Below are positions 8,949 to 63,059 of a stretch of DNA of 64,000 nucleotides, piece by piece. Source of the stretch: Octopus bimaculoides (taxonomy: Eukaryota). Under the pieces are notes generated by a model, which was not told the origin of the DNA, made no database searches, and saw only the letters and a list, made by a program, of their open reading frames with translations. The stretch is from positions 73,705,027 through 73,769,026 of the forward strand of contig NC_068988.1 of assembly GCF_001194135.2 (NCBI RefSeq), read 5' to 3'. Position numbers and translations under genes: made by a program. Position 1 is the first letter of the stretch; each line of letters opens with the position of its first letter.

Positions 8949-9000
8949 TCAGTCAGTATTAATCAGTTCTTTCTTCTTCGATGACTGGCCTGAAAGGTAG
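8949..9000 (-). CDS. MPC1: Mitochondrial pyruvate carrier 1, last coding exon (C-TAC...GAC-TGA: (F)YLSGQSSKKKELINTD*)
   Basis: Acceptor atttgtttttatttttacag| at 9001. Phase 2 completes TT|C from the 133-nt exon. TGA at 8949-8951. Confidence 0.8.
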
Positions 9001-9861: not shown

Positions 9862-9994
9862 AAATGATTGACAAATCTTGTTCCCTGGGTCAGCTGTGCA
9901 GAAACATTGGTAAAATGACAAGCAAAGAGAAGAAGATTTCTGGGTTGAACTTTCCAGGCAAATCTCATAAAAAGTAATGAATAAATTGTGAGAG
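9862..9994 (-). CDS. MPC1: Mitochondrial pyruvate carrier 1, 133-nt exon: (A)[43 protein letters not shown]
   Basis: ctttttattttcag| acceptor and |gtaagt donor. The peptide matches the MPC1 family motif FMRFAxKVQPRNxLLFACHxTN. Confidence 0.97.
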
Positions 9995-18619: not shown

Positions 18620-20478
18620 TCTTAATATATAAAGCTGAAGTTGTGTGTCTATGTGAAGCCTTTTTAAAAGTTTATAGAAATCTACATTTTCCACTTTTTC
18701 GTAAAATTTTTTACATCAATGGAATTTTCTCGATGTGAACTTTCCAGTGCAGTAATTAGATTTTTTAAATTCCGTTTACTTTGTGTGATTTAAGGGAGAT
18801 TTAGCTGTTGTTTCTAGCAACTTTTATATTTCTTCCCTTCTACCTGGAACAGCATTCTTACACACGCGCTCAACTGAGAGAGAAAGTGATACATACAACG
18901 TCATAGATTAAACTTTCTTCTCAGTATTCTTTACCTATTTTTCATAACATTGATACGGAANNNNNNNNNNNNNNNNNNNNNNNNNNNNNNNNNNNNNNNN
19001 NNNNNNNNNNNNNNNNNNNNNNNNNNNNNNNNNNNNNNNNNNNNNNNNNNNNNNNNNNNNNNNNNNNNNNNNNNNNNNNNNNNNNNNNNNNNNNNNNNNN
19101 NNNNNNNNNNNNNNNNNNNNNNNNNNNNNNNNNNNNNNNNNNNNNNNNNNNNNNNNNNNNNNNNNNNNNNNNNNNNNNNNNNNNNNNNNNNNNNNNNNNN
19201 NNNNNNNNNNNNNNNNNNNNNNNNNNNNNNNNNNNNNNNNNNNNNNNNNNNNGGTGGGGGACAATTTTCGGAAATTCCACTTAAATTCTTCTTAACTTCC
19301 AGGAAAATGAATATTTTTTCGTGAAATTTTCTACAAATATACCTTGATATATGTACATTTCGAGCATGTAGGAAATTTGAAGGAAACAACTGCAGGTTAT
19401 TTTTGAGAAGTGTTCCCCACTCGGTGGTGTTTTGGAGCAAGTCGTCCATATTTGTTTCATTTTTCTCTATTATGCGCGTATGTGCATCTGTAGATTTCTA
19501 ATGAAGTAATAGGCGGTGAAGAGAAGCCGTCATAAGAAAAATTTTAACTACCTCTATTCCTTTCTCCCCCTCTCTCTACCTCTTCCTTTCTCGCTCTCTC
19601 AAACACATACACGTGCAAGTACACAATCATTCAGTAAAATAGAACTTATGTTCATCAATGTTTTGTAAATATACCACGATTTTCACTAGGGTGTTAGGGT
19701 TGGGGTTAGGGTCTAGGGTTAGGATTAGTGTTACGGTTACGGTTTAAGGGTCAGGGTTAGGGTTTAGGGTTTAGGATCAATGTTACGTTTCCGGTTTTAG
19801 GGTCAGGGTTAGGGTTTTAGGTTAATGTTAGGGTTAGTATTAGGATTAGGTTTAGGATTAGGGCTGGGTAATTGTGCGGGTGTTAATCTGAAAAATTACA
19901 GATATGTGAAAAGTACCGACCCTGCTACCTATTATGACTTTTGTTGTTCTGTTTAATATATACATAGATTATGCCTCCAAAGAAGAGAGTTTGCTGGGGA
20001 AAGAAAGCAACCGGTTTAAAATGACAGCAACAGACTGCAGCAATTCACCACATTCCAGAAACTACTTCGAACATAATGCAAAATGGTGCATCAACATCTT
20101 CTGCCCAATCTGATAGAATTCTGGCAAAACTGTGTAGCAACAGATCGCCAGCAATTGCTTCATCACAAATTGCCGTCCTAGCTCCTGCGAAAAGGGATTA
20201 CCCTGCTATGTATAATCAGGGCAGCGCAAAAAGTTGTTTTGCACAAGCATTTCTATAGCCAATTAGATGGATGAAATTTACGTATGCTTAATAATGTTAC
20301 GCAAAACAGCCTTCGGACCTTCCCTATTAATTTCATCGTCTTCTGAATTATGAACATATTTACATCATAAGGGTTTTTTCTTTGTAAGGCTTTCTTTTTT
20401 AGCTGATTTTCACCTAGCAAGACTTATCGTAGATGGCGTAATAAGTCACACCCGAACAAGGTCGGGTTATACTGCTAG
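18620..20478 (+). mobile_element. Non-autonomous Helitron nested in the left MULE TIR
   Basis: Starts a|tcttaatatataaagctgaag and ends cccgaacaaggtcggg (hairpin) ttatactgCTAG|t. Removing it restores the TIR (caaccaa|taaggg...ataatttcttaactcatttaaaatttctttattca) to match the right TIR. Confidence 0.85.
19687..19864 (+). repeat. Degenerate telomere-like (TTAGGG)n array
   Basis: ttagggttggggttagggtctagggttaggatt...gggtcagggttagggtttagggtttagg. Confidence 0.8.
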
Positions 20479-30638: not shown

Positions 30639-33600
30639 TGTTGTGGAAGGATTCCAACCACCCACTAAGTGACTGAAAGTGAATGACACATTGCTATAAA
30701 ATAAATAACTGTCAGTATTTCATGGTAAAGCAGTTCACTGTGAGCCATTGGCAGAGAGTGCTTAACCTTGTGTAACAGTAATCGTAGTGCATCATGTGAA
30801 CAGTTTCTTTCCCACTGCTTCATCAAATTATTTATCCAACACCAGGATATAAAAGTGGCAATGAGTTATTCAAAGCTTGCAGTGGAAGTTAATTTTTTTT
30901 TTATATACAAAACCAAAGAAAAAAAACATTAACATGGAGGTACAGTTACAACAGCAAGAGCAGCAACAACAACAGCAGCTGCAACAGCAACTACAACAGC
31001 AACACTAACAGTTGCTGGAATTAATGTTGAAGAAGTCTGAAAATACTTCAGATTCTTACTCGCCAGACAGCATAGCAAATTCAATTGAAGAATTCAGCTA
31101 TAAACCAGAAGAAGGGATTACCTTCTCTGCATGATACAAAAAAATCTTCAAAGAACAAAGTAAAAATTGGACAGACAAGAAAAAAGTATGACTACTTTTA
31201 AGAAAGTTATCCCCTGCCAAACACAAAAAATATAGTAACTATATTCTGCCAAAGAAACCAGGTGAGATCTGTTTTATTGAATATTTTCAGTGACAGAAGT
31301 TCCCTGTTCAGTACTCGCTGGCAGTGTTTAAATTTGGTCAAAAAAGATGAAGATTTCTTCACCTATGCCGGGGTTGTTAACAGAGAGTGTGAAAAATTCA
31401 AATTAAATGAATTAACCCTGGACATGTTCAAACATCTAATTTTTGTTCAAGGGCTAACTGCAAACAAAGATGCAGATATACGTTCCCAGATATTAATAAA
31501 ATTAGAACTGGACCAAAAATTAACTCTACAAGTAGTAGCAGGAGAATGCCAGAGGATTATAAATCTAAGACATGATGCAGATAAAATTGATGAAAAAGAT
31601 TGCTCTCATATTCATGCATATCGACCAGTAATGGATAAGAAAAAAGAGAAAAAATGTCAAGACCAAATTCATGTTGAGTGCTGTGGTCTACATTTTAAAA
31701 GCAACTGTCCGTTTAAAAATATAAAATGCTTCAAGTGTGGTAAGATAGGTCATAAAAAATCACACTGTAAAGCAAAACCTAAAAAATGGTTCATCAGAAA
31801 ATATCATGTAAACAGGTTATCAGTGACAAGAAATACGAACGAGCCTCAAAGGAAATTTGTGAATGTAAAAATTAATAACACAAACGTAAAGTTACAATTG
31901 GATACAAGCAGTGATATCTCGATAATTAATGCAGATACATGGGAAAAAATCAGGAGACCTAGATTAAAAGAAACTTTGAAAATTGCCCACAGTGTTTCAG
32001 GAAAAAAATTACATTTTAAGAGTGAAATGATAAGTGATGTTACATTTCATGGAAAAACCTCAAAAGCCAAAGTTTTCGTATTGAATAATAAGACAAATTT
32101 ATTTAAAACAGACTGGATGGAATTATGTCACTTATGGGACTTCCCTATAAATCTTTTCTGCAAAAACATGAAGGGCTTTTCCACCAGTTGTCAGACAAAT
32201 TAAAAAAAAAAATTTAAAAAGATCTTTCCTGAAATTTTGTCTGACGAATTAGGTTTGTGCACCAAAACAAAGGTGAAGTTTCAAGTAAAAGAAAAGGTTA
32301 CACTGGTATTTAAACCAAAACGAATTGTACCTTTCATACCATTGAAACAAGTCAACATTGGATACACTTGAAAAGCATAGAGCTACTGAAAAAAATTGAT
32401 TATGCTGAATGGGCATCCCCAACAGTTTACATGATAAAAAAAAAACAATAAAATCCAGTTATGCGCGGATTTTCATCTAGTTTAAATGAGTGTTTGATGA
32501 CACATAATTACCTGCTACCAAGTCCAGAAGAAATTTCTACAAAGTTAAATGAAGGAAAATTTTTTTTCAAAGTTGGACCTATCTGAAGCATACCTACAGG
32601 TACAAGGTGAAGAGGGGTGTTCAAAACTATTAACAATAAACACTCACAGAGGAGTATTCAATAGACTTCCTTTTGGTGTAAAGGTAGCACCAGGTATTTT
32701 CCAGCAAGTTATGGACACTATGCTAGCAGGTTGGGATTTCACAATAGCCTACCTGGATGACATGCTCATTAAAAGTGAATGCTGGGACCAGCATGTAAAA
32801 CATGTAAAATATGTGTTCAGAAAAATTAGGGATTATGACTTCACTTTGAGTGAGGAGAAGTGTGAATTCTCCTTACTGAAAATAAAATATTTAGGGCAAA
32901 TCATTGACAAAAATGGATGTCAACCAAATTCATCAAGGGCATTAACAGTATGCCCCCTCCAAGAAATATATCTACCTTACAAGTTTTTTGGGAACAGGCA
33001 AATTATTACCAAAATTATATACCAAATATGCATAAGGTAGGAGCTCCACTAAATAATCTACTAAAAAAAATGTAAAATGGAATTGGTCTGAAAAATTGTT
33101 AGAAGGCAGTCAAAGAAATTAAAGAAATATTAACATCTGATTTGTCATTAGCACATTTCAATCCCACAGTGGAGATTGTAGTAGCTTCAGATGTCTTTGA
33201 GTACAGTATTGGAGCAGTAATGCTACATAAATATAGATGGTAACATAAAGACTGTGGTTCATGCTTCACATTCTCTGCCACCAGCAGAGAAAAATTACAG
33301 CCAAATCGAAAAAGAGGCTCTAGTGATTATTTTTGCCACAAAAAAATTGCACAGACTTTTACACAGTAGAAGTTTTCCACTACAGACTGATCATCATCTG
33401 TTATTATCTATATATGGGCCGAAGAAAGGAATCCCCACCCATACTGCTAATAGGTTGCAACGCTGGGGTACTATACACTGTTTATCAAGACTGATTTTTT
33501 TAAATGCTGAACCATTTGAAGATACCATGATTATTGCGTTGCAAGCGTAAAGTGAAATTTAAAATGTTTTGTGTAGTGTCATATGTGAACTGCCAGTTAC

Positions 33601-37298: not shown

Positions 37299-37379
37299 CA
37301 GTTGTCATCTTCCCACTGATGAAATCTGGATCTTTTTTAATGTCTGCTATGGCAGCCAGTGGAAGGCCCCAGTTGGCAA
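37299..37379 (-). CDS. MPC1: Mitochondrial pyruvate carrier 1, 81-nt exon: (V)[26 protein letters not shown]
   Basis: tcttattttattgttccag| acceptor and G|gtaagg donor; phase 1 at both ends joins GTT(V) and GCT(A). Matches MPC1 ANWGLPxAAIxDxKKxPxxISGxMT. Confidence 0.97.
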
Positions 37380-40104
37380 CTGGAACAATAAAATAAGATA
37401 TAATAACAATGTTATGATACAGCATAAAATTGGCAATGGACATCATCATCATCATCATTTTGAATGAGTTTTTCCATGTTGGCATGGGATGGACAAGCTT
37501 CTCCAGTACAGTATCTTGCTATTTGTTATATGGTCATTTGTCATCATCTATTTGTAGAATCCAATTATCCAACATCATAGGCCAAGAAAGAAGTTTCTAT
37601 GTGGTTGCTTGACCTGCTAAAATTAGCTTCCAAATATCCCACAAATTACACCCTCCTGTCTTAAAAAAAGGGACACAGTGGATAACAGAATCCTGGACTT
37701 ACAAAAGAGATGGGATGATCATATCTGGAAACCCTTTCATCATTGATCAAGAGCAGCCTGGAGGTTACCTTCACTTGGATTGTTTAGCACATCTTTACTC
37801 AGCCTCAGACATACTATATATCTGTACAGCACAGTCACCGAACTTGTATGTTGTTTCATCTACTACCGAAATTTTGTTTTTTATTATAGCTCATCTGTGA
37901 ACCGTCATTCTTGCATGTAAATGTTATACATCCACCAGAGCATACCTGCTTCATTTTTCCTTTCCAGCAAGCACACATTTTTCTCATTGAGTGCCCATGT
38001 TTCTACACATGGGCATCATACAACCTGCCCTGCACTTAGAGAAAGAAACCCTTTATTTCTTTCAGAATAGTCACCTGAACTTTTTCAACCCTACAACACC
38101 CATTGCAGCCTAATAAAGTCACCTAGGAATTAGAAGCTCTTGATAGTATTCAGTGATCTTCCTGGACAGTTTAAAAAATTCAGTTAACGAGTGCTCTTAC
38201 TACTACTAACTATTTTTGAGCACTCGTTACACAAACCTTCTTCACAGTATTAGTTTTTATTCAGTTACTGCTGTCCTAGATGGATGACCTTCACTACTAC
38301 TTGTCTCCTCTGTGATTAAGGCAGAACCTTTTGTTTTTTACACTGCTCAGTTTGTTCAGAGTACTCAACTTCCTAGATGGATTGCCTTCAATACAGCTTG
38401 GTAGTCACATCTTTCCATGATGGAGAGAGTAGATTTAGAGAGTTCTTAGTTTCTAAGAGGATGTAAAGGAAATGAGCAAAAACTGTTTCCATTATGAGAG
38501 AAGAGAGACTTGTAATGGTAGTCAGAAAATAACAGAGTCTCATTTCCCAGTTAGCTGGGAATTGAGGCTGTCGTCAATGATAGTGGGAGAATGTCTTTTT
38601 TTTCATTTGGACATTTGTTTTAAGAGATAAAGTCTTGTCAGATTCTAGCAAAATTGTTCAAGAATATTTCATGAACAAAATTGATTGATATTAATTCTGC
38701 AAACAGTAAATCTAGAATTTTTCTGAGTGAAAGTTCTAAATAAAAACAATAAATGTAAATATTGTTCACTTAGTTAATCTTTTCCCATCCATTTCTTGCA
38801 GTACTATAACATCTGATCTACACTTTACATCACTCAGTCATTCATCAATGACAGAAAGATGTTTTTCTTCATTTGGACACTCCTTTCATCAATGTTAAAG
38901 GTTTTTTTGGAAGCTAATGAAAATGTTCAAGAATATTAAACTTATATCCCATACTAAATCAACTCCAGTCTTCAAAGATTTTTTTGTGGCCAATATCTAT
39001 ACAATATCACCATCTTTATGCACACTTCATGCAGTTTGTCTTTTCACATGGTGAGAGAAGTTTCTTTTTAATTTTTAAGAAAAGTAATAGATCTTTGAAT
39101 GCTTCAACACACTTAGCAGATAGTTTCTGTTATTTAAATGATCTAAGAAAATATCTAAATAACAGAAACAATCTTAATACATTTAGTGAGCTTTCTAAGC
39201 AGTTCATGTACTTCATTTTATGGGTGATTCATGCCCCAAAGTCTGCTTAACATGGTTTCTACAGTTGAATGTTCTTCCTAATGCCAACCACTTCACAGTT
39301 TCTTTCATTGTGCTGCTTTTGTGGAACTAGTATTAATGATGTTACCATGAAGCTTGCAACACTAAAATTCTCTTTGACTAAATGGGGCTACAGTAGAGAA
39401 AGAGATAAGAAATACAGGTGCATAAGAAATTCAGGTATGAGTGTATGGGAAGAGTGAGATATGACTGGAGATAGGGAATGGGTGTGAGATGAATATAATG
39501 AAGGACAGTGTTGAGGGATGATAAGTAGAGATGATAAGAAAGAGTAGGTGGAAAAAAGAAACTGGGTAGGGTTGAGGGGTAGACATAGAGACTGGTGGAT
39601 AAGGAGTGAGAAGTGACCTTTGATACATGAGTTTGGGGAGATAGGGGAGAGTAAGAAATTAAATAATGCAGAAAGGAGAATAATAATAACTATTAAAGTC
39701 AGGGAGAGGATGAGAGAAAGAGTGGAAGAGATGACATATTCAGTAGGCTGCAAAGTGAGTGGGTGGAGAAGCAGGCATACTACATGAGAAGAGTGAAAAA
39801 TGTATAGTAGTGAAGAAGGAAAGACAATTTCATGGCTGAGGAGTATGATCAATATAAAATGTGGGTAGAAAGACAGTAATAAGAATAAAGGCTGGATATC
39901 AAGTGAAACTGTTCTGGTAGTGACCTTATGAAGTATGCAGTTCTGCTCACATTTAATAACAGCAACACAACACTGCAGGTTAAGAGATGATGGTTAGTAG
40001 GAGTGACATGAGGAGGAAATGGGGTGAGAGGAAATTGTGTGTTTGTGTGTGTGTGTGTGTACACACACACACACACATTGTGCTTCCAGAATCTCAGTTT
40101 CACT

Positions 40105-42170
40105 GAGATGGGCGGGTTGACATCTCACCTCATTCTAGTTCTTCCCCTGGAGACCTGGAGATCTGGACCAAACCTGACTAAGCTATCGGATGTATTGGAC
40201 CATACGGACCTATCTCTAAAGGCGCTGAGTTGCAGGCCTAATTTTCTTTTGTTGATTTTTGCCCTTGTCACTGCCTCATACTCCCTTAGAGCAGTGCTGA
40301 TCAGGTCTATGTACCTGGTGTTCAACACTATGGGGGTGACATGGTTCTCCATGTCCTAGTTCATGTAGAATGCCCCTTAATGCCTCCGGTTTCTGCAGTA
40401 GTGGTTCTGGAGTGAGCACATACAGAAGAGACAGAGACAACTTTCACAGACCAAGCACATGACACTGAATGGTTCCAATAGGTGAGAATTTACTCACACT
40501 ACCAAACAAACATTGCAGTACATTGCAGCAATCTGGGCATGGGAGATGGGACCAAAAACAGTTGCCATGAGAACAGCTGTCAAGTATTGGTGGTTGACCC
40601 TATCAAAAGCTTTTGATTGATCCAAATTGATCAGAGCCCCACTCACTCCAGGTTCATTACCCAGCCTTTCTATAATGTATCACATGAGGTGGAGCATATT
40701 GTAGATAAATCTGCTTGGGATGGTGCATATTGCCAATCAGTCCCTCAACAAGTGCCAACTTCTTCATTAACACTTATGTCAGAATTTTGAAATCTGCATT
40801 TAACAAAATTATAAGCCTAAAACTATTTATTTGATCCCTTTTGTTTGGGTCCTTTCTCAGTAGTGCTATGGCTTTTGGTTCATAGAACTAGGAATTCTCC
40901 CATTCTACAACTTGTAAATATCTGCCAAGAGACCTCCAAGCATGTGACATATAAATATAAATTTATATGTTGTAGGATAGACCATCCAAACCAGGAAATT
41001 TGCCTCACTCACACCTCCTGCAGCCAATCTTGTATGTTCATGGTTGTTTTCAATTTTGCACAACACTGCTTCACTTGCCAAGAGTTGCAATAGACCATCA
41101 AAGTAGGTACTAAAGTCCATCCAGTGTTCCAGTTCCCCAATTGTTCCAAACAGTTGTATGAAGAGCTGCTCAAGTAACATGCACCCATTTTGGTCACCAA
41201 AGACCAAATCAAGGCTTTGTTGTCATGTTGTGCTCCTACTGCTTGGGCACATTAAGTGGCTTTCATTCTCTTGCGTCCTAGAGCAAAACAACTCAGACTT
41301 CCTGCTTAGCAATGAAGAATTGGTTAAAGGCTAATCTTTCTGCAGGCACATCAGATGTAATGCCTTTCCTAAGCGCCTCTTCAAAGTTTCTATTTTCTAC
41401 TGTTTTCTTCTATCGTTACTGCCTTACTAAACCCAATTGATTCTATTCTAATCACCTTTTCTGGTGCAAGCTACCATTTGTTGCTGACAACTGACCCCCC
41501 TCCCATCAATGCCCACTTAACTAATTCGTTAATTCAATCTCTGTAACATTAGTACACCAGGAGTGATACATTCATATAACTGGGTCCCTGCCTTCAGGGG
41601 CCTATCTAGGTTGACTGTACAAATCACAAATTTGTGGTTTGTGTAGTAGGAAATTTTAAATAGTGAACAACCCATGCCATCTTTAACTACAAATGTATAA
41701 AATACTCCATCTAGATACGACCTTAATGACCCAATGTGGTTTTTCCATGTCCACATTGGCACATTTGGGAAATTCAGTGCGTACCTGTCAGACAATCAGA
41801 AATGTCAGAAGAGGCTGGGAAAGGCTCTTACACCCTTCTTCTATCAGCTAGCCCTGTACAATCCAAATGTGGATCGAAGATGGCATTCCAGTCACCCACT
41901 AGCACTAAATATTGGGACACACCCTGGAAAAACCCCAGATGCCTAAAGAAATTCAACTGTCATGCCCCTGTCAGAGCATAAACAGCTTACTAGTTGGAAG
42001 TGACCTCCTTCACTACTGTTCCCATTCAGGACCATCAACTTACCTTCTGGGTCCATGAAAATGTTCTGTACCATGAGATACATACCTGAAATAATACTGC
42101 AGTTTCCCCACCCCACCCCTATTCCCAATTGACATGGAAATAAACAATCTTGTACTCACTGAAAATGAAT
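40105..42170 (-). mobile_element. Decayed L1/Tx1-like ORF2 fragments (RT 40105-40830, endonuclease about 41620-42170) with a probable RTE-like piece between
   Basis: SKAFDRVNHQYL near 40600. ORF 40125-40352 IDLISTALREYEAVTRAKIN...FGPDLQ follows the RT catalytic region. The middle fragment is only weakly recognisable. Confidence 0.6.
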
Positions 42171-42827
42171 ATTTCACTTTGGCCACCGCATCTGAGGTCA
42201 TTGAGCAGGTGGTCCTGTTTCCAAGACAACCTGGCATTCCCATTGCTTATTCTAAATAAGGTTATGTTTGGCAGCAGAGGAGGAGGGTGAAAGGAATCTG
42301 TGGAGGAACAGATGTTTCATTCCTCATATAGCAGAGTATTTCCAAAATCAGTTCTTTTGTTCCAAGAGCTGTCATCTCCTTTGATTTGAGAAACCATGTT
42401 TTTTTGTTTTAAAATATTGAATTTTGCCAATTTAAGTTCCTAAATTCATGAATATTTCACAGAGCCAACTCACTGCAGGGAAAGCAAGTTGGTTTATTAA
42501 ATTTGATAGTACAAGAATACAAATAACAATCTTTGAAACAACAAAATTAAACAAAACTCATAAATTTTGGACAGATGTTGTTCCTTTCCTCCTCCTTCTC
42601 CTTCTGTAACAATAACAACAATTTCAAATTTTGGCACAAGGCCAGCAATTTCGAGGGAAGGGATAAGTTAATTACATTATTTTATTGACCTCCGAAAGAA
42701 TGAAAGGCAAAGTAGACCTAAACAGAATTTGAACTCAGATCACAAAGATGGATGAAATGCAACTAAGCATTTTGCCTGCCATGCTAATGGTTTTGCCAGC
42801 TCACCACCGAACAATGATGATGATGAT

Positions 42828-43378
42828 GATGCTCTGATGCAGCACCAGGCAATGGCTCTCATGGTTTCTGATCTTAATTGATAGGAAGTATTAACATGTA
42901 CATGCTTTGTCTTGGTTTAAAAGATGGGCTACAGCAAATATTCTGCTTAATATCACAGATGTGCTTGTCAGTTGTTTGACCTTAACCAGTTGAGCATGTC
43001 CCTTGGTGACTGATAGTATATCCATCTCTGATCATGTGCAGGAGTAGTGGGGAAGCATCACAGCCACATGTTAGGAGGAATTCTTTGGGACTTGAATAAT
43101 TCACCTCTGGAAACATGAGTGTTTCATTCATCATCCTTAAACAACCCTTATTCAGGGACCTTTTGAGTGGGATGGGCTACTTGACCTAAGAAAATTCTAA
43201 CTGGCTCCACCTGCAAGATCATGTGTTGTTCATCTTGATATGAGGTTACCATGTTGTGTACATATGGTTGTGATGCATATGCCTGGTGTACCTTTATCAG
43301 ATAGGTGGTCATGATAGGTATACTGGGCTCCGAATATTTGTACCCATGTTGCTTTGATGGCATGCACTGCTCCCTCAT

Positions 43379-43438
<60 letters not shown>

Positions 43439-43992
43439 TATGCCCTGATGCAGTACCAAGCAGTGGCTTTCATGGCTTCTCATCTTAACTGATTGGAAGT
43501 GTTATCATGGACATTGTGTTGTATTGGTATAAAAGGTGGGCTACAGCAAATATTCTGCTCAATACCACAGATTTGCTTGTCAGTTGTTTAGCCTTAACCA
43601 GTTGAGCATGTCCCTTAGTGCATCTCTGATCACGAGCAGAGGTAGTGGGGGAACATTATAGCCATGTGTTGAAAGGAATTCTTTGGGATCTGGATAATTC
43701 ACCTTTGGAAACATGGGTATTTCGTTCAACATCCTTAACCCTTATTCAGGGACCTTTTGAGTGGGATGGGCTACTCGGCCTGAAGAAAATTTTAACTAAG
43801 CCCCATTTGCAAAGTCATGCACTGTTAATCTTGATATGAGATCACCATATCATGTATATATGGTTGCAACGCATGTGCCTGGTGTACCCTTATCAGACAG
43901 GTAGTCATGATGGGTATACTGGGCTTCATATATTTTACCCCAGTGTCACTGCTCTCTCACTCAATAATAATGATAATAATAATATTAATAAT
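42828..43992 (+). repeat. Two head-to-tail copies of a 550-600 bp (TAA)n-tailed interspersed repeat; a third partial copy at 45313-45655
   Basis: Copies start atgc(t/c)ctga at about 42828, 43440 and 45313. They share ttgtcagttg..ttaaccagttgagcatgtccctt and gggaccttttgagtgggatgggctact, and end in aataataat runs. Confidence 0.85.
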
Positions 43993-44177
43993 AGGATTAT
44001 GACATTGGTACTTGGGTGTGGAATGTCATCATCATCAAATTCATTTAATGTCCATTGTCCATGCTGGCATGGATTGGACAGTTTGACACTAGAAGGCTGC
44101 GCCAGGCTCCAATCTGATTTGGCATGGTTTTCTATGGCTGGATGCCCTTCCTAACGCCAAACACTCCAAGAGTGGTT

Positions 44178-45149
44178 GCAATGAATTACGAAATTCAATA
44201 TGTAAATGTTAAGTATTCTTTAATACATTATAATCAAAGGACTCATAATTGCCAGAACCGTTTCACATTTCCACACTTTCTGCTAGTAATTCAACCTTGC
44301 TTTATCTTAAATGCGTGTATACATACACACACACACATATGTATGCATATATAAGAATGTGTATGTGTGTAAATAGGGAACATCTTTTCTTTCAAACATA
44401 TTACCATCAAGATATGAGTATAATTAATCTTATCTGCTTAGCAAGAGGATCAGAGAATACTCATTGTCATAAATATAATAGTTAATGCCAGGTTTAAAAA
44501 TCATGCAATAGTTAAGTCTAATGGGCTTCATAATTTAGTTTACATGTGATGTATTAGAGTGTTGAATTTTGATTTGATTTTACTTCTAAATTTTTTTTTG
44601 GGGGGGGGGGTGACATTCCTATACAAAGATATACTGCCATTGACTACTTTTTCAATTTTGTTCCTTATGTATAAGAGGTACCAGATGTAATGTGCAAGAG
44701 AGAAAGCTAAGCTGGTATGGGCATATGATTGTGTATGGATGAAGACAGCTGCATAAAGAAGTGCCAATCTCTAATTGTGGAAGAAGTAGACCCAGGAGGG
44801 CATGGGATCATCATCATCATCATCATCATCATTTAACGTCCATTATCCATGCTGGCATGGGTTGGACGGTTTGACCAAGGCTGGTGAGATGGAAGGCTGC
44901 ACCAGACTCCAGTCTGATTTGGCATGATTTTCTATGGCTGGATGCCTTTCTTAAGGCCAATCACTCCAAGAGTATAATGGGTACTTTTACATGCCACCAG
45001 CATGGATGCCATTTGCATGACACCAGTATCTGCCACAACTGATAGGCCTCCTTTTCAAGCACGACAAAATGCCAAAGGTCTTGTTCATTGCCTCTGTGAG
45101 GCCCAACACTCAAAAGAAACTCAGCCACTTTGCCTCCATGGGGCCCAAC
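44178..45149. repeat. Uninterrupted paralog of 512-4140, including the RTE tail at the same junction
   Basis: See 512-4140; the RTE tail starts after gcatgg(a/g)atcatcatc in both copies. Confidence 0.9.
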
Positions 45150-45277
45150 ATAGTGAACAACCAATTATCAAAGTTTATGATGTGTGGAAAGAGACGCTGT
45201 GAGACCTCTGACAACAGGCTGCTGTCCACTTTCACAGAATCAACCAGAGCAAACAAGACTGAGTGCTCTGAGAATAA

Positions 45278-45317
<40 letters not shown>

Positions 45318-45957
45318 GCTCTGAAGAAATATCAGGCAGTGGCTCCCATGGCTTCTGATCTTAACTGATTGGAAGTGCTCACATGCACATGTTTTTTCTT
45401 GGTGTAAGATGGACTACGGCAAGTATTTTGTTCAATATCACAGATTTGCTTGTCAGTTGCTTAATCTTAACCAGCATGTCCTTTAGTGTCTGACAATATA
45501 TGCATGTTTGATCATGAGCAAGAGTAGTGAGAAGAGCATCACAGCTAGGTATTGGGAGGAATTGTTTGGAGTTTGCATGATTCACCTTGGAAACAAGGGT
45601 GTTTCATTCATCATCCTTAAACAACCTTTATTTTGGGATCTTTTGAGTGGGACTATTATTATTTAATGCCATAAGGTGGTAAGCTGGCAGAATCATTTAC
45701 ATATTGGACAAAATGCTTTGCAGCAATTCGTCCGTCTTTGCATTCTGGGTTCAAATTCTGTTATAGTCAACTTTTGCCTTTCATCTTTTTGGGAGCGATA
45801 AAATAAGTACCAGTCATTCACTGAACTTGATATAATTAACTAGTGCCCTCAATACAAATTTTCAGGCTTTATGCATATAGTAGAAAAAATTATCATTTAA
45901 CGTCATTCCTGGAGTTATTCATTTCTATATTAAATATTAATATAATAATAAACTTAC

Positions 45958-45973
45958 CTGGTCCCCAAAAGTG
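45958..45973 (-). CDS. MPC1: Mitochondrial pyruvate carrier 1, 16-nt micro-exon CACTTTTGGGGACCAG (HFWGP+G)
   Basis: tttttttttcttttgtag|CACTTTTGGGGACCAG|gtaagt supplies exactly the invariant HFWGP missing from the 81-nt exon, in the correct phase. Confidence 0.95.
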
Positions 45974-47569
45974 CTACAAAAGAAAAAAAAATTCCTGAAT
46001 ATATATTAAAATGATTTTAAGTGGTAGAAACAATTCAAAACTTCTTGAGAAACTGATAGTCAAAGATGATGACTACTTAAATATGAAATAATTAATAGGA
46101 GTCTAATAAAAGCATTTTATACATGTATGGATAGCACAAATAATCATATTTATAAATTAAAAAATAAAAATAAAGATATTTTGAATATATGTTATATCAA
46201 AACAGTCTTTGAAAACGTTCTAAGAAATTTTCTAAGCATACTGAAGAAAAGAAAAAGCAATATCTATAAGATAGCAAGGAATGTTCAATTTCTTGCTATC
46301 TTATAGATATTGCTTTTTCTTTCACTAAACTTATAAATAACAATGAATATCATCAGTTTAGTAGACACAAATTATGAAGCTACATGCTGCCATTGAACAA
46401 ACTATTCAAAAAGATGAGTAACTGGATTATTATATCCCCACAGAAAACAAAACAATAAAGTTGAGAAAATGATATAACACAACTCTTTATTCAGCCACCT
46501 CCCTGACACTTTTTCACCTGACATGTATCATGCTATTTTTTTGACAACTTCTCTCCCACATTTTAATTCCTCTCACATCATATATCTCCTATACTACTCA
46601 TACCATTGCACACTAGTTGTCTTCTCTCCTTTTGTCTCCCTGCATCTACCCCTCAATATCATCCCACATTTTTTTATAATTTGTAATTTTGCAACTTGAG
46701 ATATTTATATCTTGTCTCTCTCCAAAGGGGCATCTGAAACATTAGACTTCACATCATGAAATATATCCAACTGTTTGAATTATTTGTATTAACTTTTTGC
46801 CAACACAGAACAGTCAGGACATTTGTCTCTCAGTTACGTATATGCAATGAACTTTATTTGACTGTTTTATTATTTCACTAATTTTTCTTTAGCCAACCTT
46901 TGCTATTGATTACAAGGATAATCCAATATAAAGTCACAAACCTTTAAACTGTAAGGTCTTCCCTTCATTCTCATCACTTTCCCTCCTCCTTTACTCACTC
47001 TGTCCCTTTCCTTTCTTTTTCTTTCTTTCTCACCCCTCCCTAATTCTTCAATCCCTCTGCTCCCTACTTCTCTCCTCTCCTTCCATGTGACCAGTGTTCT
47101 GCCAAGCTTGACGTTTCCTTCTTGATTCAACTACCATCCGTATAAGATTCTTTCCCATGACTTATATCTCTTATTTTCCTACCGTAAGGCTTCACTTCTA
47201 CACACACTGGTTTAATTTAATTCATCCTTAGTCGAAAGACACCTGTTGTTAATGTCCTGTTGTTTGCATTTGTAATTGTGTACTATTTTTCCATTTTTTT
47301 CGTCCTTGTTTTCGTATACATTTGCTTGCTTTCTTCCAAATAATCTAGTGTTCTTAACTTAGATTTTCTTAGGGCTGGCCAGACTGGAGCAGTCTCAAGT
47401 GTAACTGGCCAAAACTGCAACAACGATCTGGAACACGACTGATGACAGAAAGCTCCAAATGACCTGTCCTTGTCTTTTCCTGTCTTTTTTTGTATCGCCT
47501 AACTGCCCAGATGTTTTGTTGTCGCCTGTTACATCCTTGTTCCATTTTTTGATTTGTTTATATATAATA

Positions 47570-48923: not shown

Positions 48924-50635
48924 CCAATCCTTTATTTGGTGGCCAATGAGGAAACTAAGGATAGATGAATGGTTAGTGAGAGCTGTACAAGCTATGTACA
49001 GGGATGCTGTCAGTAGGGTGAGGGTTGGCAACGAGTATAGTGAAGAATTCTGGGTAGGAGTAGGGGTCCACCAAGGATCAGTCCTCAGCCCCCTCTTATT
49101 CATCATAGTCCTCCAGACAATAACAGAGGAATTCAAGACAGGATGCCTCTGGGAGCTTCTCTATGTTGATGACCTTGCTCTAAATGCTGAGTCACTATCA
49201 GAACTAGAGGAGAAGTTTCAGGTGTGGAAGCAAGGATTAGAATCGAAGGGCCTTAGAGTCAACCTAGCTAAAACCAAAGTCTTAATAAGTAGGAAAGGCA
49301 GACAAATGACAAATCCCTTCAGGTAGATGGCCCTGCTCGATCTGTAGAAAAGGTGTAGGCAGAAACTCCATAAGATGTACCTATTGTAAGCTATGGACAC
49401 ATAAGAGGTGCAGCAATATCAAAGGAAGGCTAACTGGAAAGATAGTTTTTGTATGTGGCAAATACTCAGGAGCAATAAACACTGAAAATGTGCAGAAAAC
49501 AACTTCTGTCACATGTCAGGGGGAAAAACTAGAAGTAGTTGATAGCTCCCATTACCTGGGTGACCAAGTCAGCAGTGGGGGTGGATGCTCTGAGAGTGTA
49601 GCTGCTAGAATAAGAATAGCCTGGACAAAGTCCAGAGAGTCCCTACCTCTGCTGGTAACAAAGGGCCTCTCACTCAGAGTAAAATGTAGACAGTATGACG
49701 CATGTGTATGAACAGTCATGCTACATGGCAGTGAAACATGGGCCGTGACTGCTAAGGACATGCGTAAGCTTGCAAGGAATGAAGCCAGTGTGCTCCGCTG
49801 GATGAGTAATGTCAGCGTGCATACACAACAGAGTGTAAGCACCCTAAGAAAAAAGTTGGACATAAGAAGCATCAGATGTGGTGTGCAAGAGAGACGACTG
49901 TGCTGGTATAGTCATGTGTTGCATATGGATGAGGACAGCTGTGTGAAAAAGTGTCACACCCAAGCAGTAGAGGAAGGAGTAGATCCAAAAGGACCTAGGA
50001 TGAGGTGGTGAAGCACGACCTTCGAACACTGGGCCTCAAGAAGGTGATAACAAGTGACTGAGACTTTGGAGATATGATGTGCTTGAGAAGACCCAGCAAG
50101 CCAAGTGAGACTGTAACTGTGGCCTATGCCAGTGCAGCATAACCAGCCCATTTAAGAGTACCCTTCAATCATTGAGCAATAAACTGCGCTTGCAAAGACC
50201 TGTTGAGTCAAGTGAAGTCATTGTTGTGGCTGATGCCAGTACCACCTGATTGGCACCCATGCCGGTGGCACATACAAAGTACCAATTTGTGTGTGGTCAT
50301 TGCCAGTGCCACCTGACTGGTCCTGTGCCAGTGGCACATAAAAAGCACCATTCGAGCATGGTCGTTACCAGTCCCACCTGACTGGCTTCCATGCTGGTGG
50401 CACATAAGCACCATTCAAATGTGGTCAATGCCAGTACCACCTGACTGGCCTTCGTGCCAGTGGCATGTAAAAAGCACCACTACACTTTCAGAGTGGTTGG
50501 CGTGAGGAAGGGCATCCAGCTGTAGAAACTTTGCCAGATCAGATTGTAGCCTGGTTCAGCTTTCTGGCTTGCCAGCCCTCAGTCAAAGTATCCAAAGCAT
50601 GGAAAGCAGACATTAAATGACAATGATGATGATGA
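48922..50635 (+). mobile_element. 5'-truncated RTE-clade LINE with complete 3' end and about 60-bp tandem repeats in the 3' UTR
   Basis: ORFs 48850-49326, 49490-49711 and 49718-50011 (GVHQGSVLSPLLF, LLYVDDL); GAT tail at about 50630; follows a (GA)n tract. Confidence 0.95.
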
Positions 50636-53426: not shown

Positions 53427-53494
<68 letters not shown>

Positions 53495-54074
53495 TGTATG
53501 TACGTATGTATTTATGCATATGTGTTTGTGTCAGTATGTCTCCCCACCACCATCGATTGACAACTGATGTTGGTGTGTTTGCATCTCCGTAACTTAGCTC
53601 ATACAATAAGCACCAGGCTTACAGGGAATAAGTCCAGTGGGCGATTTCTTCAACTAAAGGGCGGTGCTCTAGCATGGCCACCATCAAATGACTGAAACAA
53701 GTAAAAGAATAAAAGAATACTAGAAGAACGTTCCATACCACTAAACCAAGAAGGTTTTTTGAATATGTACGATGTATTTTAAGGCTAAATTGTAAGTCTG
53801 TTTTCATTTGCATAGCCAAGATATTTTGGTTGGATTATATAGTTATTGGTTTTACACATCTTTCTATATTCTGTAACTGTCGCAATATAGAAACATTTCC
53901 CATGGCACCAGCACACAATTTACAGATGCTTACATCTTTTGTGTTTTCCATGAAGTTTTCGCAGGTCCAGCTAGTTACTATTATTTACATAAGTGTAAAA
54001 TTCAGCACCATTTACCAAATAATTGCATATATATATATAGTAACTGTCCTTTTAAGTGGTCCTTTTGTTCATTT

Positions 54075-56230: not shown

Positions 56231-58096
56231 CAGTTTTATTCAATCAATTCAATCTGATTAATTCTATTTTATTTATATATAACTAATCTACATATAATTA
56301 ATTCACTTTACCTTCACAAAATAGGGGAAATATTGATAATTGAAATTATCAGCCAAGAAAATAGTGTTGCTGTAGGTCAAATTGACCTTGGCAACATGCG
56401 AAACAAGCAACAAGGCACATTTAGCAACATCTGAGCTATGCCATAAGGTACTTACTTAGGACAATCTACTGAAAATAAAAGATCCTTATAAACAAGAGCA
56501 GTCTTTTCTCAATGATCACTAGATTGCAAAATTTTGGCAAACAAAAGAGAAATTAAGAACAAATAAGACTGATTTTCTTTAAAGTAAGTTTGAAATTCTT
56601 CTTAAAAAATTAGGTTGTAAAAACAAAAAGGAGGAGAAGCATTTCTATAGAGTTTCTAAAAATCATAAGGAACTATCACGAAAAACAATAGCGTAGGTTT
56701 TGTTTGTTTGTTTTTTTTAATACCACAAATATATTACAATATATTTAGTCTTTTTGAGGTGGTGTTAGCAGTGAGTTGACTATGCTTTAACTGAAGAGAT
56801 TTAATAGGGTTGAAACATGCCAAGGCTTTTCACTCCGCTACTGCATATCTCAAATTAATTTTGGTCAATTAAAAGTATGAGAGTTCCTTCCCATGTCCCT
56901 TTTGAGAATAGCTTTCGTTAATCCTAATTTGTAACATGTGCTTCCCTATATTTTCATTATAAAGAAAGCAGTCTTGTGAAATTTTCCATTATTAAAGCAT
57001 ATTTAGCTTACTCAATATTTCAACCATACAAATTCAATTAAAAACATTTTATATTTCAAAAATCACAATCCCACAACTATGTCTTTAAAAAGACTGATTC
57101 AGATCTAAGTCATATAATGCTTTGAAAATAAATTTACTTGTTAAATTAGCTGATTTGCTTAATTAATAGTACATCATTACATTTTCTGTACTGTTTTTCT
57201 TCTAATCTTGCAACAATTTTCCTTAACTACATATCTCACTTTAAGTTCTGACTTTTCAATATCTGACCAACTCTTTCTCAAAGTAGCCAGTAACAAATCT
57301 GATTAGTTGTCCTAAGCACCAGTAACCATAATAATATCCTTGTTTTAGTAATAATTCTTCAAGCAAAGTCTCCTACCTGTAATATGAATAACTTTCCTTG
57401 CTTGCTAAATATTATGATGTATACAAACTTCTGTTGCAATAAATGGTGAAATATTAAACTGACTCAAAAATTCTTTGTGAAAACATTCTGAAACTATGCA
57501 TAACTATCAATAATCTAAGTCTTTGATGAAAAAAAAGCTCAGAGAAAATTTCTAATAACTTATGAATAATAACAAGTATGTTTATAATTTTCAAAATAGG
57601 GCTGCATATCATAAGTTTTCAGATATACCCAAAACATTTATCCTGAAAAATTAAAATTAAATATACAGTGGCAATAGATAACATAATAATTGAGGATGAT
57701 GTTCTAGTACATCACATTTCTTTTATAGTGTTTTACATAGAAATAAAATGACAAGAGTAATGTAGAAGTGTAATATCAATAAATGTTAACACAAACAATA
57801 AAGATATTCCCCAGAATACTGTGTAATAAGTATTTTATAAGATGTTCAAAGAATTAGGTTAATTGATCAAAACAGTGGAAAATACGCACAATACTGAAGA
57901 GTTTTAAATGACAGCATATGAAATCAACTAATCTCCCTCAAAGTACCTCATAAATATCCAAAAATGGTACTGACATGTCAAATCTCCAGACAGTATGCTT
58001 ACAACAAAGAATGGATACTTGTAGCTTGATTACCATTTAAAAAGTATTCAAATCAGGTTAACAGAAATATTTTATTAAAATATTGAAAATACTCAC

Positions 58097-58100
58097 AGTA
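58097..58100 (-). CDS. MPC1: Mitochondrial pyruvate carrier 1, 4-nt micro-exon TACT (completes S/C codon plus Thr)
   Basis: ttattttctttttcatatgatgttgttaaatggtcaacag|TACT|gtgagt gives xx|T-ACT-CAC = (S)TH. As I recall it, human MPC1 has a 4-nt TACG exon at this position (exons 71/4/97/133/25 nt, summing to 109 aa). A 4-nt exon cannot be proven from genomic sequence alone. Confidence 0.8.
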
Positions 58101-58299
58101 CTGTTGACCATTTAACAACATCATATGAAAAAGAAAATAAAGGAAATTATCAAACAAATATTGATAGAATTTAGCATTGTTGAGAAATTTTTAGCAAAGA
58201 ATGGACTCTCTACCAGTGGCATGCAAAGAAGTTGAACCACTCCCATACTACCCACTTCAGAAAAATTCTTAGCATTAAGTGGCAAGAAAAAATTCTTAC

Positions 58300-61939: not shown

Positions 61940-63059
61940 NNNNNNNNNNNNNNNNNNNNNNNNNNNNNNNNNNNNNNNNNNNNNNNNNNNNNNNNNNNNN
62001 NNNNNNNNNNNNNNNNNNNNNNNNNNNNNNNNNNNNNNNNNNNNNNNNNNNNNNNNNNNNNNNNNNNNNNNNNNNNNNNNNNNNNNNNNNNNNNNNNNNN
62101 NNNNNNNNNNNNNNNNNNNNNNNNNNNNNNNNNNNNNNNNNNNNNNNNNNNNNNNNNNNNNNNNNNNNNNNNNNNNNNNNNNNNNNNNNNNNNNNNNNNN
62201 NNNNNNNNNNNNNNNNNNNNNNNNNNNNNNNNNNNNNNNNNNNNNNNNNNNNNNNNNNNNNNNNNNNNNNNNNNNNNNNNNNNNNNNNNNNNNNNNNNNN
62301 NNNNNNNNNNNNNNNNNNNNNNNNNNNNNNNNNNNNNNNNNNNNNNNNNNNNNNNNNNNNNNNNNNNNNNNNNNNNNNNNNNNNNNNNNNNNNNNNNNNN
62401 NNNNNNNNNNNNNNNNNNNNNNNNNNNNNNNNNNNNNNNNNNNNNNNNNNNNNNNNNNNNNNNNNNNNNNNNNNNNNNNNNNNNNNNNNNNNNNNNNNNN
62501 NNNNNNNNNNNNNNNNNNNNNNNNNNNNNNNNNNNNNNNNNNNNNNNNNNNNNNNNNNNNNNNNNNNNNNNNNNNNNNNNNNNNNNNNNNNNNNNNNNNA
62601 GATTGGTACCATGAAATTCCTCAAACTGAGCTCAATCATTTAAGCTTAATTGAAATTTTTAAATAAAGAAGTTAATTACACTTAACTTTTTTGATACAAA
62701 TTTTTGTTGCATGGGACCAAAACTATGAAATTCTTCACGCTTTCTTCTATCATTGAAGCTAAGATAAATATATTTTGCTTTTAAAATAAAAAAGTTATTT
62801 AGATCTAAACTTGATTGGTGGTATTACTTACTCTCCTATAACGCTGTTACAAATTTTGATGTAAACTTTTTTTCTACTGGACCAAATCTCAATTTTTTTA
62901 ATGCCAAGATGTAGCTACGGACCAGTCCACTTCAAAAATGTTAATGGTTTTCCATTTGGTTAAGAACTGAATTAGCAACAAGCTCTGAAAGATGCTGCAT
63001 GTGACTAAATTGTGGCCTTAAGAATATTATTCAACTATAGTAGTAGTTGAATGATACAT

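What the first reader, a model, noticed from the sequence alone, without database searches (positions are those of the whole stretch)
45958..45973. Second, 16-nt micro-exon carrying the invariant HFWGP motif: tandem non-3n micro-exons
Seen: textbook splice sites flank a 16-nt exon lying between 12.1-kb and 8.6-kb introns. 16+81 nt equals the 97-nt single exon I recall for human MPC1, so an extra intron splits it here. The 4-nt, 16-nt and combined 20-nt units are all non-multiples of 3, so any skipping destroys the frame. Inference: these could act as a splicing on/off (NMD) switch for mitochondrial pyruvate import, and automated annotation is likely to mispredict this gene.
Basis: partly seen in the sequence, partly recalled or inferred. 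Interest (0 to 1): 0.75.

Follow-up and report, generated by a model that had tools for sequence, protein, structure and literature searches.

The report
Ancient 16-nt MPC1 coding micro-exon
The 16-base exon is a real coding piece of the octopus mitochondrial pyruvate carrier gene next to a 4-base exon, but the pair is an ancient arrangement shared with fungi, a coral-like animal and amphioxus that gene predictors often miss, not an octopus novelty or a shown on/off switch.

Summary
Window 45958-45973 (minus strand) reads tag|CACTTTTGGGGACCAG|gtaagt. It is the only HFWGP-coding site in the window. It joins in frame to the 81-nt exon at 37379-37299.

The window is Octopus bimaculoides. The full-length MPC1 protein models of O. 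bimaculoides and O. sinensis can be spliced from the genome only by using this exon plus the 4-nt exon TACT at 58100-58097.

A bat MPC1 gene has exons of 71, 4, 97, 133 and 22 nt.

The 16|81 intron is not an octopus addition. The same 4+16 tandem occurs in Argonauta, Patella, amphioxus, a coral-like contig and Mortierella fungi. It is fused to 97 nt in a bat, a nemertean and a sponge.

Annotation errors are common. Examples are the "MQHFWGP", "CRY" and intron-start models.

The NMD-switch idea has no support here. Skipping does create early stop codons. However, every octopus model that reaches upstream keeps the 16-nt exon. The human 4-bp MPC1 exon is published as constitutively included even when NMD is inhibited.

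Verdict: a real, ordinary constitutive micro-exon with unexpectedly deep conservation.

The parts
45958..45973 (-). 16-nt coding micro-exon CACTTTTGGGGACCAG. It encodes His26-Pro30 (HFWGP) plus the first base of the Val31 codon of MPC1.
   Evidence: unique in the window, 0 in shuffles; exact protein mapping
45949..46017 (-). Conservation island around the 16-nt exon (-44 to +9). It is the only colinear stretch alignable to Argonauta hians in 2 kb around the exon (82.6% over 69 nt). It holds the pyrimidine tract, AG and the GTAAGT donor.
58097..58100 (-). 4-nt coding micro-exon TACT (caacag|TACT|gtgagtat). With the AG that ends exon 1 it completes AGT ACT = Ser24-Thr25.
   Evidence: The flanks tcaacagTACTgtgagtatt are identical in Patella.
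58077..58164 (-). 'Exon island' of the 4-nt exon. The pyrimidine-rich tract is displaced to about -46..-27, followed by a spacer, AG, TACT and GTGAGTAT. It is the only Argonauta-alignable stretch in 800 nt (77% over 92 nt).
   Evidence: human counterpart described in PMC9929638
45974..58096 (-). Intron between the 4-nt and 16-nt exons, 12,123 nt.
37380..45957 (-). Intron between the 16-nt and 81-nt exons, 8,578 nt, phase 1 (CCA G|TT).
37299..37379 (-). 81-nt exon encoding (V)[26 protein letters not shown].
9862..9994 (-). 133-nt exon ([20 protein letters not shown]...FVNHF).
8949..9000 (-). Last coding exon part (49 nt, YLSGQSSKKKELINTD) plus the TGA stop.
57947..57976 (-). Coding part (MSVPFLDIYE) of the alternative upstream exon of RefSeq isoform X1. 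It is spliced directly to the 16-nt exon and lies 121 nt downstream of the 4-nt exon.
37380..37458 (-). Intronic (ATG)n-led open frame just upstream of the 81-nt exon. The orthologous stretch is used as a false N-terminus in the O. vulgaris model CAI9727223.1, which therefore lacks HFWGP.

Best explanation
This is a constitutive protein-coding micro-exon of the mitochondrial pyruvate carrier subunit MPC1 of Octopus bimaculoides (minus strand). It supplies the invariant HFWGP residues. It lies in tandem with a 4-nt micro-exon: exon 1 ...TGC AG | TACT | CAC TTT TGG GGA CCA G | TT GCC....

Both units must be spliced in to keep the frame. Omitting either gives a stop codon within about 40 codons.

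Shown: the sequence, the frame, the splice signals, exact agreement with full-length protein models, and conservation of the exon and its proximal flanks.

Inferred: inclusion is constitutive. Recognition of the 16-nt exon rests on unusually strong sites, namely a 14-nt pyrimidine run and a perfect CAG|GTAAGT donor. The 4-nt exon uses an 'exon island' with a displaced pyrimidine tract and probably distal branch points, as shown experimentally for the human gene.

The 4+16 tandem is an inherited arrangement. It is present in Mortierella fungi, a coral-like cnidarian, amphioxus, a limpet and octopods. The 16|81 intron was later lost in some lineages (a mammal, a nemertean, a sponge), giving the 97-nt exon.
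For: - Unique HFWGP-coding site with AG/GT flanks.
- The window is 100% identical to O. bimaculoides CM046608.1.
- P0126 (O. bimaculoides) and P0122 (O. sinensis) map exactly as 71, 4, 16, 81, 133 and 49 nt.
- The reassembled protein hits Pfam MPC at 118.5 bits and human MPC1 structures at E = 5.5e-42.
- HFWGP is invariant in 9 aligned species.
- A cephalopod-like transcript contig carries TGC AGT ACT CAC TTC TGG GGA CCA GTT contiguously.
- The Argonauta exon differs only at a synonymous site and at the last base (G to A), which matches its V-to-I change.
- The same 16-nt exon occurs in Patella and Branchiostoma, in contigs 100%, 96% and 95% identical to Mortierella proteins, and in a contig 93% identical to Pocillopora.
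- The 4-nt exon is present in a bat, Tubulanus, Branchiostoma and a sponge.
- The human 4-bp exon is constitutive, with no skipped product under cycloheximide (PMC9929638).
Against: - I examined no octopus RNA reads or cDNA. Inclusion is inferred from protein models and from a transcript of another cephalopod-like species.
- RefSeq lists short isoforms around the 4-nt exon (X1, X3, X4). These could be real alternative or unproductive products.
- The taxa of the metagenome contigs are inferred from protein identity.
- With the few taxa sampled, strict parsimony does not by itself exclude parallel intron gains.
Confidence: 0.85

Rival explanations
1. One reading: regulated skipping of the 4-nt and/or 16-nt exon acts as an unproductive-splicing (NMD) on/off switch for mitochondrial pyruvate import in octopus.
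For: All three skipping outcomes shift the frame and give stop codons 171-181 nt upstream of the last exon junction. RefSeq isoform X3 and the O. vulgaris and Argonauta 'MQHFWGP' models correspond exactly to exon 1 joined to the 16-nt exon without the 4-nt exon.
Against: - No model skips the 16-nt exon while keeping upstream exons.
- Four-nucleotide exons are commonly lost by aligners and predictors, so the 'MQ' models are more simply artefacts. The same kind of error appears in Patella, a sponge, corals, Mortierella and many vertebrate models.
- In human and mouse cells the 4-bp exon is fully included and no skipped RNA appears with cycloheximide (PMC9929638).
- The arrangement is conserved across animals and fungi, as expected for plain coding sequence.
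Confidence: 0.07
2. The 16|81 intron is a lineage-specific gain, in molluscs or cephalopods, with independent gains elsewhere. It would have split an ancestral 97-nt exon.
For: A bat, the nemertean Tubulanus and the sponge Halichondria have an unsplit 97-nt exon. Counting events on these few taxa alone does not favour ancestry.
Against: The intron has the identical position and phase (CCN G/A|TT) in octopods, Patella, Branchiostoma, a coral-like contig, an unidentified AT-rich eukaryote and three Mortierella-like contigs. Ancestry needs fewer improbable events than many exact parallel insertions. This rests on established knowledge that intron loss is common and exact parallel gain is rare.
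Confidence: 0.06
3. The short RefSeq products (MQHFWGP..., MSVPFLDIYEHFWGP..., MHFWGP...) are real N-terminally truncated MPC1 isoforms. They would arise by skipping the 4-nt exon or by alternative upstream exons, so the micro-exon region would control the N-terminal helix rather than on/off expression.
For: The ATG CAG at the end of exon 1 becomes in frame with HFWGP when the 4-nt exon is omitted, and this is conserved in three octopods. An alternative exon with its own ATG and a GT donor exists at 57976-57947.
Against: These are computational models, and the ATG arises trivially from Leu (TTA/CTA) followed by Cys (TGC). The truncated proteins would lack the conserved SKEF(K/R)xYL segment seen in all full-length orthologues. 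No transcript evidence was available.
Confidence: 0.1
4. The match is a chance pseudo-exon, and HFWGP is encoded elsewhere.
For: None beyond the small size of the match.
Against: It is the only HFWGP-coding site in the window, with 0 in shuffles. The sequence upstream of the 81-nt exon reads YFIV, not HFWG. There is an orthologous island in Argonauta, and the protein models map exactly.
Confidence: 0.01

Closest known systems
Human MPC1 4-bp micro-exon (exon 2) and its 'exon island' (Koh, Shin & Kim 2023, PMC9929638)
   Same: It is the same gene and the same place, between an exon 1 ending ...AG and the HFWGP codons. It is also non-3n. The octopus has the orthologous 4-nt exon (TACT versus CACG) with a displaced pyrimidine tract and a strong GTRAGT donor.
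   Different: The finding itself is the neighbouring 16-nt exon, which mammals do not have as a separate exon. The paper compares only mammals and does not describe a tandem pair.
Mammalian MPC1 97-nt exon 3
   Same: It encodes the same residues: 16 + 81 = 97 nt, with the same outer boundaries and phases.
   Different: In octopus it is split by an 8.6-kb phase-1 intron after CCA G. The split form also occurs in amphioxus, a limpet, a coral-like contig and Mortierella.
Unproductive splicing / poison-exon AS-NMD regulation, e.g. of SR protein genes (own knowledge)
   Same: Omission would create premature stop codons well upstream of the last junction.
   Different: Known cases show regulated alternative isoforms and usually long ultraconserved flanks. 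Here no skipped isoform of the 16-nt exon is on record, and the conserved flanks are only about 45-65 nt.
Neural 3-27-nt micro-exons controlled by SRRM4/eMIC (Irimia et al. 2014; own knowledge)
   Same: Very short exons with strong splice sites and conserved proximal introns.
   Different: Those are mostly multiples of 3, alternative and tissue-specific. This one is non-3n and encodes an invariant core motif, so it must be constitutive for function.
Conserved, frequently misannotated micro-exons in plants (Yu et al. 2022, Nat Commun; own knowledge, not checked here)
   Same: Ancient coding micro-exons that gene predictors skip or replace with shifted splice sites.
   Different: A different kingdom and different genes. 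Here the evidence is for animals and fungi.

Membership tests
Mitochondrial pyruvate carrier family (Pfam PF03650, MPC), MPC1 orthologue | Whole-protein match to the MPC profile above the curated cut-off | tested here: met
   118.5 bits against a cut-off of 27, E = 1.9e-34
Mitochondrial pyruvate carrier family (Pfam PF03650, MPC), MPC1 orthologue | Closer to MPC1 than to MPC2 | tested here: met
   Human MPC1 chains score E = 5.5e-42; MPC2 chains score about 1e-6
Mitochondrial pyruvate carrier family (Pfam PF03650, MPC), MPC1 orthologue | Pyruvate transport activity as a heterodimer with MPC2 | not testable with these tools
   Needs a transport assay or complementation
Coding micro-exon (30 nt or less, canonical GT-AG) | Length of 30 nt or less, with AG acceptor and GT donor directly flanking | tested here: met
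   16 nt, tag|...|gtaagt
Coding micro-exon (30 nt or less, canonical GT-AG) | Present in the mature mRNA or protein | tested here: met
   Full-length and short protein models of two Octopus species map exactly through it. A contiguous transcript exists in a cephalopod-like species. Direct O. bimaculoides reads were not available.
Coding micro-exon (30 nt or less, canonical GT-AG) | Orthologous exon conserved in other species | tested here: met
   O. sinensis, Argonauta, Patella, Branchiostoma, a coral-like contig and Mortierella-like contigs
AS-NMD regulatory switch | Skipping yields a premature stop more than 50 nt upstream of the last exon junction | tested here: met
   171-181 nt upstream
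AS-NMD regulatory switch | A skipped isoform exists in transcripts | tested here: not met
   No model skips the 16-nt exon while keeping upstream exons. The only 4-nt-skipped models are of a kind explained by prediction error. This was tested on protein models only.
AS-NMD regulatory switch | Inclusion varies with tissue or condition and rises or falls with NMD inhibition | not testable with these tools
   No octopus RNA-seq access. In human and mouse cells the 4-bp exon shows no skipping with cycloheximide.
MPC1 4-bp micro-exon 'exon island' (Koh et al. 2023) | 4-nt exon between an exon 1 ending AG and the HFWGP codons | tested here: met
   TACT at 58100-58097. It is the only candidate conserved across three octopods.
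MPC1 4-bp micro-exon 'exon island' (Koh et al. 2023) | Conserved upstream segment of about 65 nt with a pyrimidine tract displaced from the 3' splice site, plus a strong 5' splice site | tested here: met
   Tract at about -46..-27, GTGAGTAT donor, Argonauta-conserved from -64 to +20
MPC1 4-bp micro-exon 'exon island' (Koh et al. 2023) | Distal branch points and autonomous exon definition in minigenes | not testable with these tools
   Needs lariat mapping or minigene assays

The most novel reading that the evidence does not exclude
The two frame-breaking micro-exons have been kept side by side since before animals and fungi diverged because their splicing acts as a gate on MPC1 output. In octopus, the 4-nt-skipped and alternative-exon models (X1, X3, X4) would then be real regulated unproductive or truncated isoforms that tune mitochondrial pyruvate entry.
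Probability: 0.07. Interest if true: 0.7.

Novelty: new member of a known kind. Interest (0 to 1): 0.35.

Why it matters
The exon itself is ordinary coding sequence and is already contained in RefSeq models.

What is useful is the context. MPC1 carries a 4-nt and a 16-nt exon in tandem, and the pair is shared by Mortierella fungi, a coral-like cnidarian, amphioxus and molluscs. That makes it one of the oldest and shortest conserved exon pairs one could point to.

It is also a clean natural test case for how spliceosomes define exons too short for ordinary exon definition. The human 4-bp island is already being developed as a splice-modulating tool, and comparative versions could help define its minimal elements.

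It is also a practical warning. In the 360 MPC1 representatives collected here, 84 lack the expected Ser-Thr before HFWGP. Many of those show the signature of a missed 4-nt exon. N-termini of MPC1 in databases should therefore not be trusted without micro-exon-aware checking.

Tried and rejected
1. I looked for exon 1 inside the window by regex and tblastn. It is not there. It lies about 14.9 kb beyond the window end (virtual coordinates 78960-78890).
2. A second candidate 4-nt exon exists in O. bimaculoides (cag|CACA|gtcgtc) and another in O. sinensis (cag|CACT|gtgatg). I rejected both because they are not orthologous and lack conserved flanks.
3. The Lemmus MPC1 locus turned out to be an intronless copy, useless for intron positions.
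4. Look-ups for Oryx (P0241) and Dendronephthya (P0170) found no record.
5. The second homologue search, with the N-terminal half, returned mostly short fragments and no squid or Nautilus. No decapodiform, Nautilus, bivalve or annelid genomic locus could be obtained.
6. My first depth-first spliced mapper gave spurious 1-2-nt exons and then timed out. I replaced it with a fewest-exons breadth-first mapper with a 3-nt minimum exon.
7. Long ORFs in the window are artefacts of masked N runs or retroelement fragments, not genes related to the finding.
8. Literature searches for micro-exon plus MPC1, pyruvate carrier or octopus found only the human 4-bp study.

Full report
**What is at the coordinates.** On the minus strand the window reads ...attcaggaatttttttttcttttgtag|CACTTTTGGGGACCAG|gtaagtttatt.... 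The 16 nt are window 45973..45958. They are preceded by a 14-nt uninterrupted pyrimidine run and AG. They are followed by GTAAGT, so the donor is the full consensus CAG|GTAAGT. The exon reads CAC TTT TGG GGA CCA G, which is H-F-W-G-P plus one base.

A degenerate search for AG + HFWGP codons + R + GT finds this one site on either strand. It found none in 100 dinucleotide-preserving shuffles. tblastn with MPC1 finds no other HFWGP in the window.

**The gene around it.** tblastn and exact spliced mapping place the following MPC1 exons on the minus strand:
- an 81-nt exon at 37379-37299;
- a 133-nt exon at 9994-9862;
- a 49-nt terminal coding part at 9000-8952, followed by TGA.

The 16-nt exon's last G joins TT of the 81-nt exon to give Val31, and the frame continues as [27 protein letters not shown]. 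Directly upstream of the 81-nt exon the genome reads ...[12 protein letters not shown], not HFWG. HFWGP must therefore come from a separate exon.

**Source of the window.** The window is 100% identical over an 801-nt test stretch to Octopus bimaculoides chromosome CM046608.1 (GCA_001194135.2). All exons fall at a constant offset. The reassembled protein matches Pfam MPC at 118.5 bits. It matches solved human MPC1 structures at E = 5.5e-42, far better than MPC2.

**The 4-nt partner.** Exon 1 is not in the window. In the chromosome it lies about 14.9 kb beyond the window end and finishes ...GAC TAC TTA TGC AG|gtgaga. The full-length proteins of O. bimaculoides (XP_014773940.1) and O. sinensis (XP_029640322.1) read ...DYLCSTHFWGP. 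The Ser-Thr can only come from AG + TACT.

The fewest-exon exact mapping of both proteins uses caacag|TACT|gtgagtat. That site is window 58100-58097 in O. bimaculoides, with the orthologous site in O. sinensis. In each of O. bimaculoides, O. sinensis and Argonauta hians there is exactly one ag|TACT|gtgagtat between exon 1 and the 16-nt exon, at the orthologous place. In Argonauta it sits in the only alignable stretch of the surrounding 800 nt, from -64 to +20.

A transcript contig from a public RNA run has a cephalopod-like N-terminus. It carries TGC AGT ACT CAC TTC TGG GGA CCA GTT as one contiguous piece. The tandem 4-nt and 16-nt exons are therefore real.

**Conservation of the 16-nt exon.** O. 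sinensis has the identical exon and flanks. Argonauta has CACTTTTGGGGTCCAA. Its final A gives ATT (Ile), exactly as in the Argonauta protein (HFWGPIANWG). Only -44 to +9 around the exon aligns between Argonauta and the window within 2 kb.

**Is the intron an octopus extra?** No. I mapped annotated proteins exactly onto their genomes and obtained these exon sizes (nt):
- Branchiostoma belcheri: 77, 4 (CACG), 16, 81, 133, 46.
- Patella vulgata, as annotated: 75, 16, 81, 134.
- Tubulanus polymorphus: 77, 4 (TACT), 97, 133, 55.
- The bat Phyllostomus discolor: 71, 4 (CACG), 97, 133, 22.
- The sponge Halichondria panicea, as annotated: 51, 97, 133, 13.

A scan of metagenome contigs then found the same ag|CAYTTYTGGGGNCCN(G/A)|gt exon in six genomic contigs:
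- One is 100% identical over 76 residues to Mortierella alpina MPC1. Two are 95-96% identical to other Mortierella species.
- One is 93% identical to the coral Pocillopora.
- Two come from an AT-rich unidentified eukaryote closest to the sponge protein.

In the coral-like contig, exon 1 ends TTA TGC AG|gtaggt. It is followed by cag|CACG|gtaagt and cag|CATTTTTGGGGACCGG|gtaagt. In a Mortierella-like contig, exon 1 (MASWASQLGQKVTSPEFKKYLM + AG|gtaaac) is followed by tatag|CACC|gtaagt and then the 16-nt exon. This reproduces the ...YLMSTHFWGP of the Dissophora protein.

The 4+16 tandem is therefore shared by fungi and animals. The simplest reading is ancestry, with loss of the 16|81 intron in the bat, nemertean and sponge lineages. 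This last step is an inference. It rests on the identical position and phase, and on the general rarity of exact parallel gains. Few taxa were sampled, and the contig taxa are inferred from identity.

**Annotation.**
- The 'MQHFWGP' models are exactly the last 6 nt of exon 1 (ATG CAG) joined to the 16-nt exon, with the 4-nt exon left out. They are O. bimaculoides X3, O. vulgaris CAI9727222.1 and Argonauta GAB1600434.1. Adding TACT restores a full Argonauta protein, MATIAHRLLASVKSKEFRTYLCSTHFWGP....
- O. vulgaris CAI9727223.1 starts in the intron before the 81-nt exon and lacks HFWGP.
- Patella's 'CRY' is TGC AG|G TAT, read through a GTATGT donor. A tcaacag|TACT|gtgagtatt with flanks identical to octopus lies in its intron.
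- The sponge model starts in intron 1. The true exon 1 (MMAVRRAINKLKSKETREYFM + AG|gtaagc) and a cacag|CACA|gtaagt exon are visible.
- Among the 360 representatives collected, 276 have ST before HFWGP and 84 do not. Thirteen of those show R + Y/W/S/C/F/L, as expected from reading AG|GTnn. Twenty-six show Q directly before H. The sample is not unbiased, because one search favoured short models.

**Mechanism.** Shown: the frame, the signals and the conservation. Skipping the 4-nt, the 16-nt or both exons gives stop codons ending at nt 120, 108 and 114 of the CDS. These are 171-181 nt before the last junction, so such RNAs would be NMD candidates.

Inferred: inclusion is constitutive. Every octopus model that reaches upstream contains the 16-nt exon. 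The exon encodes an invariant motif. For the neighbouring 4-bp exon, human and mouse cells show complete inclusion and no skipped RNA even with cycloheximide (PMC9929638).

That study also found a core 'exon island' made of 67 bp upstream plus the 5' splice site. It has a pyrimidine-rich region and branch points unusually far upstream. The octopus 4-nt island has the same layout: a tract at about -46..-27, a roughly 26-nt spacer, then AG, TACT and GTGAGTAT. The versions in the limpet, nemertean, amphioxus and bat share this layout. The 16-nt exon instead has a conventional adjacent tract and a perfect donor.

**Comparison and novelty.** The exon is contained in RefSeq models, and the 4-bp exon is published for human. 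That paper compares only mammals. My literature searches found no description of the 16-nt exon or of the tandem pair. I therefore file it as a new member of a known kind, namely constitutive non-3n coding micro-exons. The added observation is very deep conservation and frequent misannotation. The NMD-switch idea remains untested speculation, and the only relevant experimental data point the other way.

Noticed in passing
L005 (Patella vulgata) 1071-1075 and 2214-2217: The RefSeq Patella MPC1 model reads ...YLCRY by running 4 nt past a TGCAG|GTATGT donor. An unused tcaacag|TACT|gtgagtatt, with flanks identical to octopus, lies about 200 nt upstream of its 16-nt exon. The true protein is probably ...YLCSTHFWGP.
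   Followed up: partly
L010 (Halichondria panicea) about 2860-3051: The sponge model's N-terminus (MSLTIGCIKLQLPFHST) is intron read-through. A conserved exon 1 (MMAVRRAINKLKSKETREYFM + AG|gtaagc) and a 4-nt exon, ttccacag|CACA|gtaagtag, are present upstream.
   Followed up: partly
protein set (analysis): 84 of 360 MPC1 cluster representatives lack Ser-Thr before HFWGP. The recurrent forms are M/C-R-[YWSCFL]-HFWGP and ...Q-HFWGP. They occur in vertebrate, coral, Mortierella, chytrid and hemichordate models and look like missed 4-nt exons. The sample is biased, so this is not a true error rate.
   Followed up: partly
P0188 (Oppiella nova model): The mite model reads ...SYLCRYVANWGIPIAA, so it has no HFWGP at all. 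This is the pattern expected if both micro-exons were missed, and it hints that the 16|81 intron also exists in a chelicerate. The locus could not be fetched.
   Followed up: no
L061, L072, L073, L077, L083, L086 (metagenome contigs): Six contigs of unidentified eukaryotes, some from root- or fungus-associated samples, carry a single 20-nt exon ag|GYACN CAYTTYTGGGGACCN|gt(y)(n)gt. The 4- and 16-nt units are fused and both outer boundaries are shifted by one base relative to animals.
   Followed up: no
window 57947-57976 (minus): An alternative upstream coding exon (MSVPFLDIYE, donor GAG|gtactt) is used by RefSeq isoform X1. It sits 121 nt downstream of the 4-nt exon. It could reflect use of a downstream donor, or retained sequence, rather than a separate promoter.
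   Followed up: partly
window 10326-11003 (+) and 31262-32203 (+): Retroelement fragments lie inside the 27-kb MPC1 intron. One is a reverse-transcriptase plus PHD-finger ORF. The other is a weak gag zinc-knuckle and aspartyl-protease-like ORF.
   Followed up: partly
window 11375-11910, 13347-14118, 18961-19252, 20643-20661, 61940-62599: Runs of N (2,279 bases in all) are present in the window. They create several spurious long ORFs in the ORF list.
   Followed up: yes
L003 vs L002 (O. bimaculoides vs O. sinensis): The introns flanking the 4-nt exon differ more than two-fold between the two Octopus species: 20.8 vs 8.3 kb and 12.1 vs 5.9 kb. Part of the first includes N runs. The 16|81 intron is similar in the two species, 8.6 vs 8.8 kb.
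   Followed up: no
window 50233-50465; 43380-43440; 53433-53516: An approximately 64-66-nt tandem repeat (3.3-3.6 copies), a (TAA)n microsatellite and a (TATG)n microsatellite lie in the 12.1-kb and 8.6-kb introns.
   Followed up: no
L006 (Lemmus lemmus): A 75-residue 'MPC1' model is encoded without introns, so it is probably a truncated processed retrocopy.
   Followed up: no
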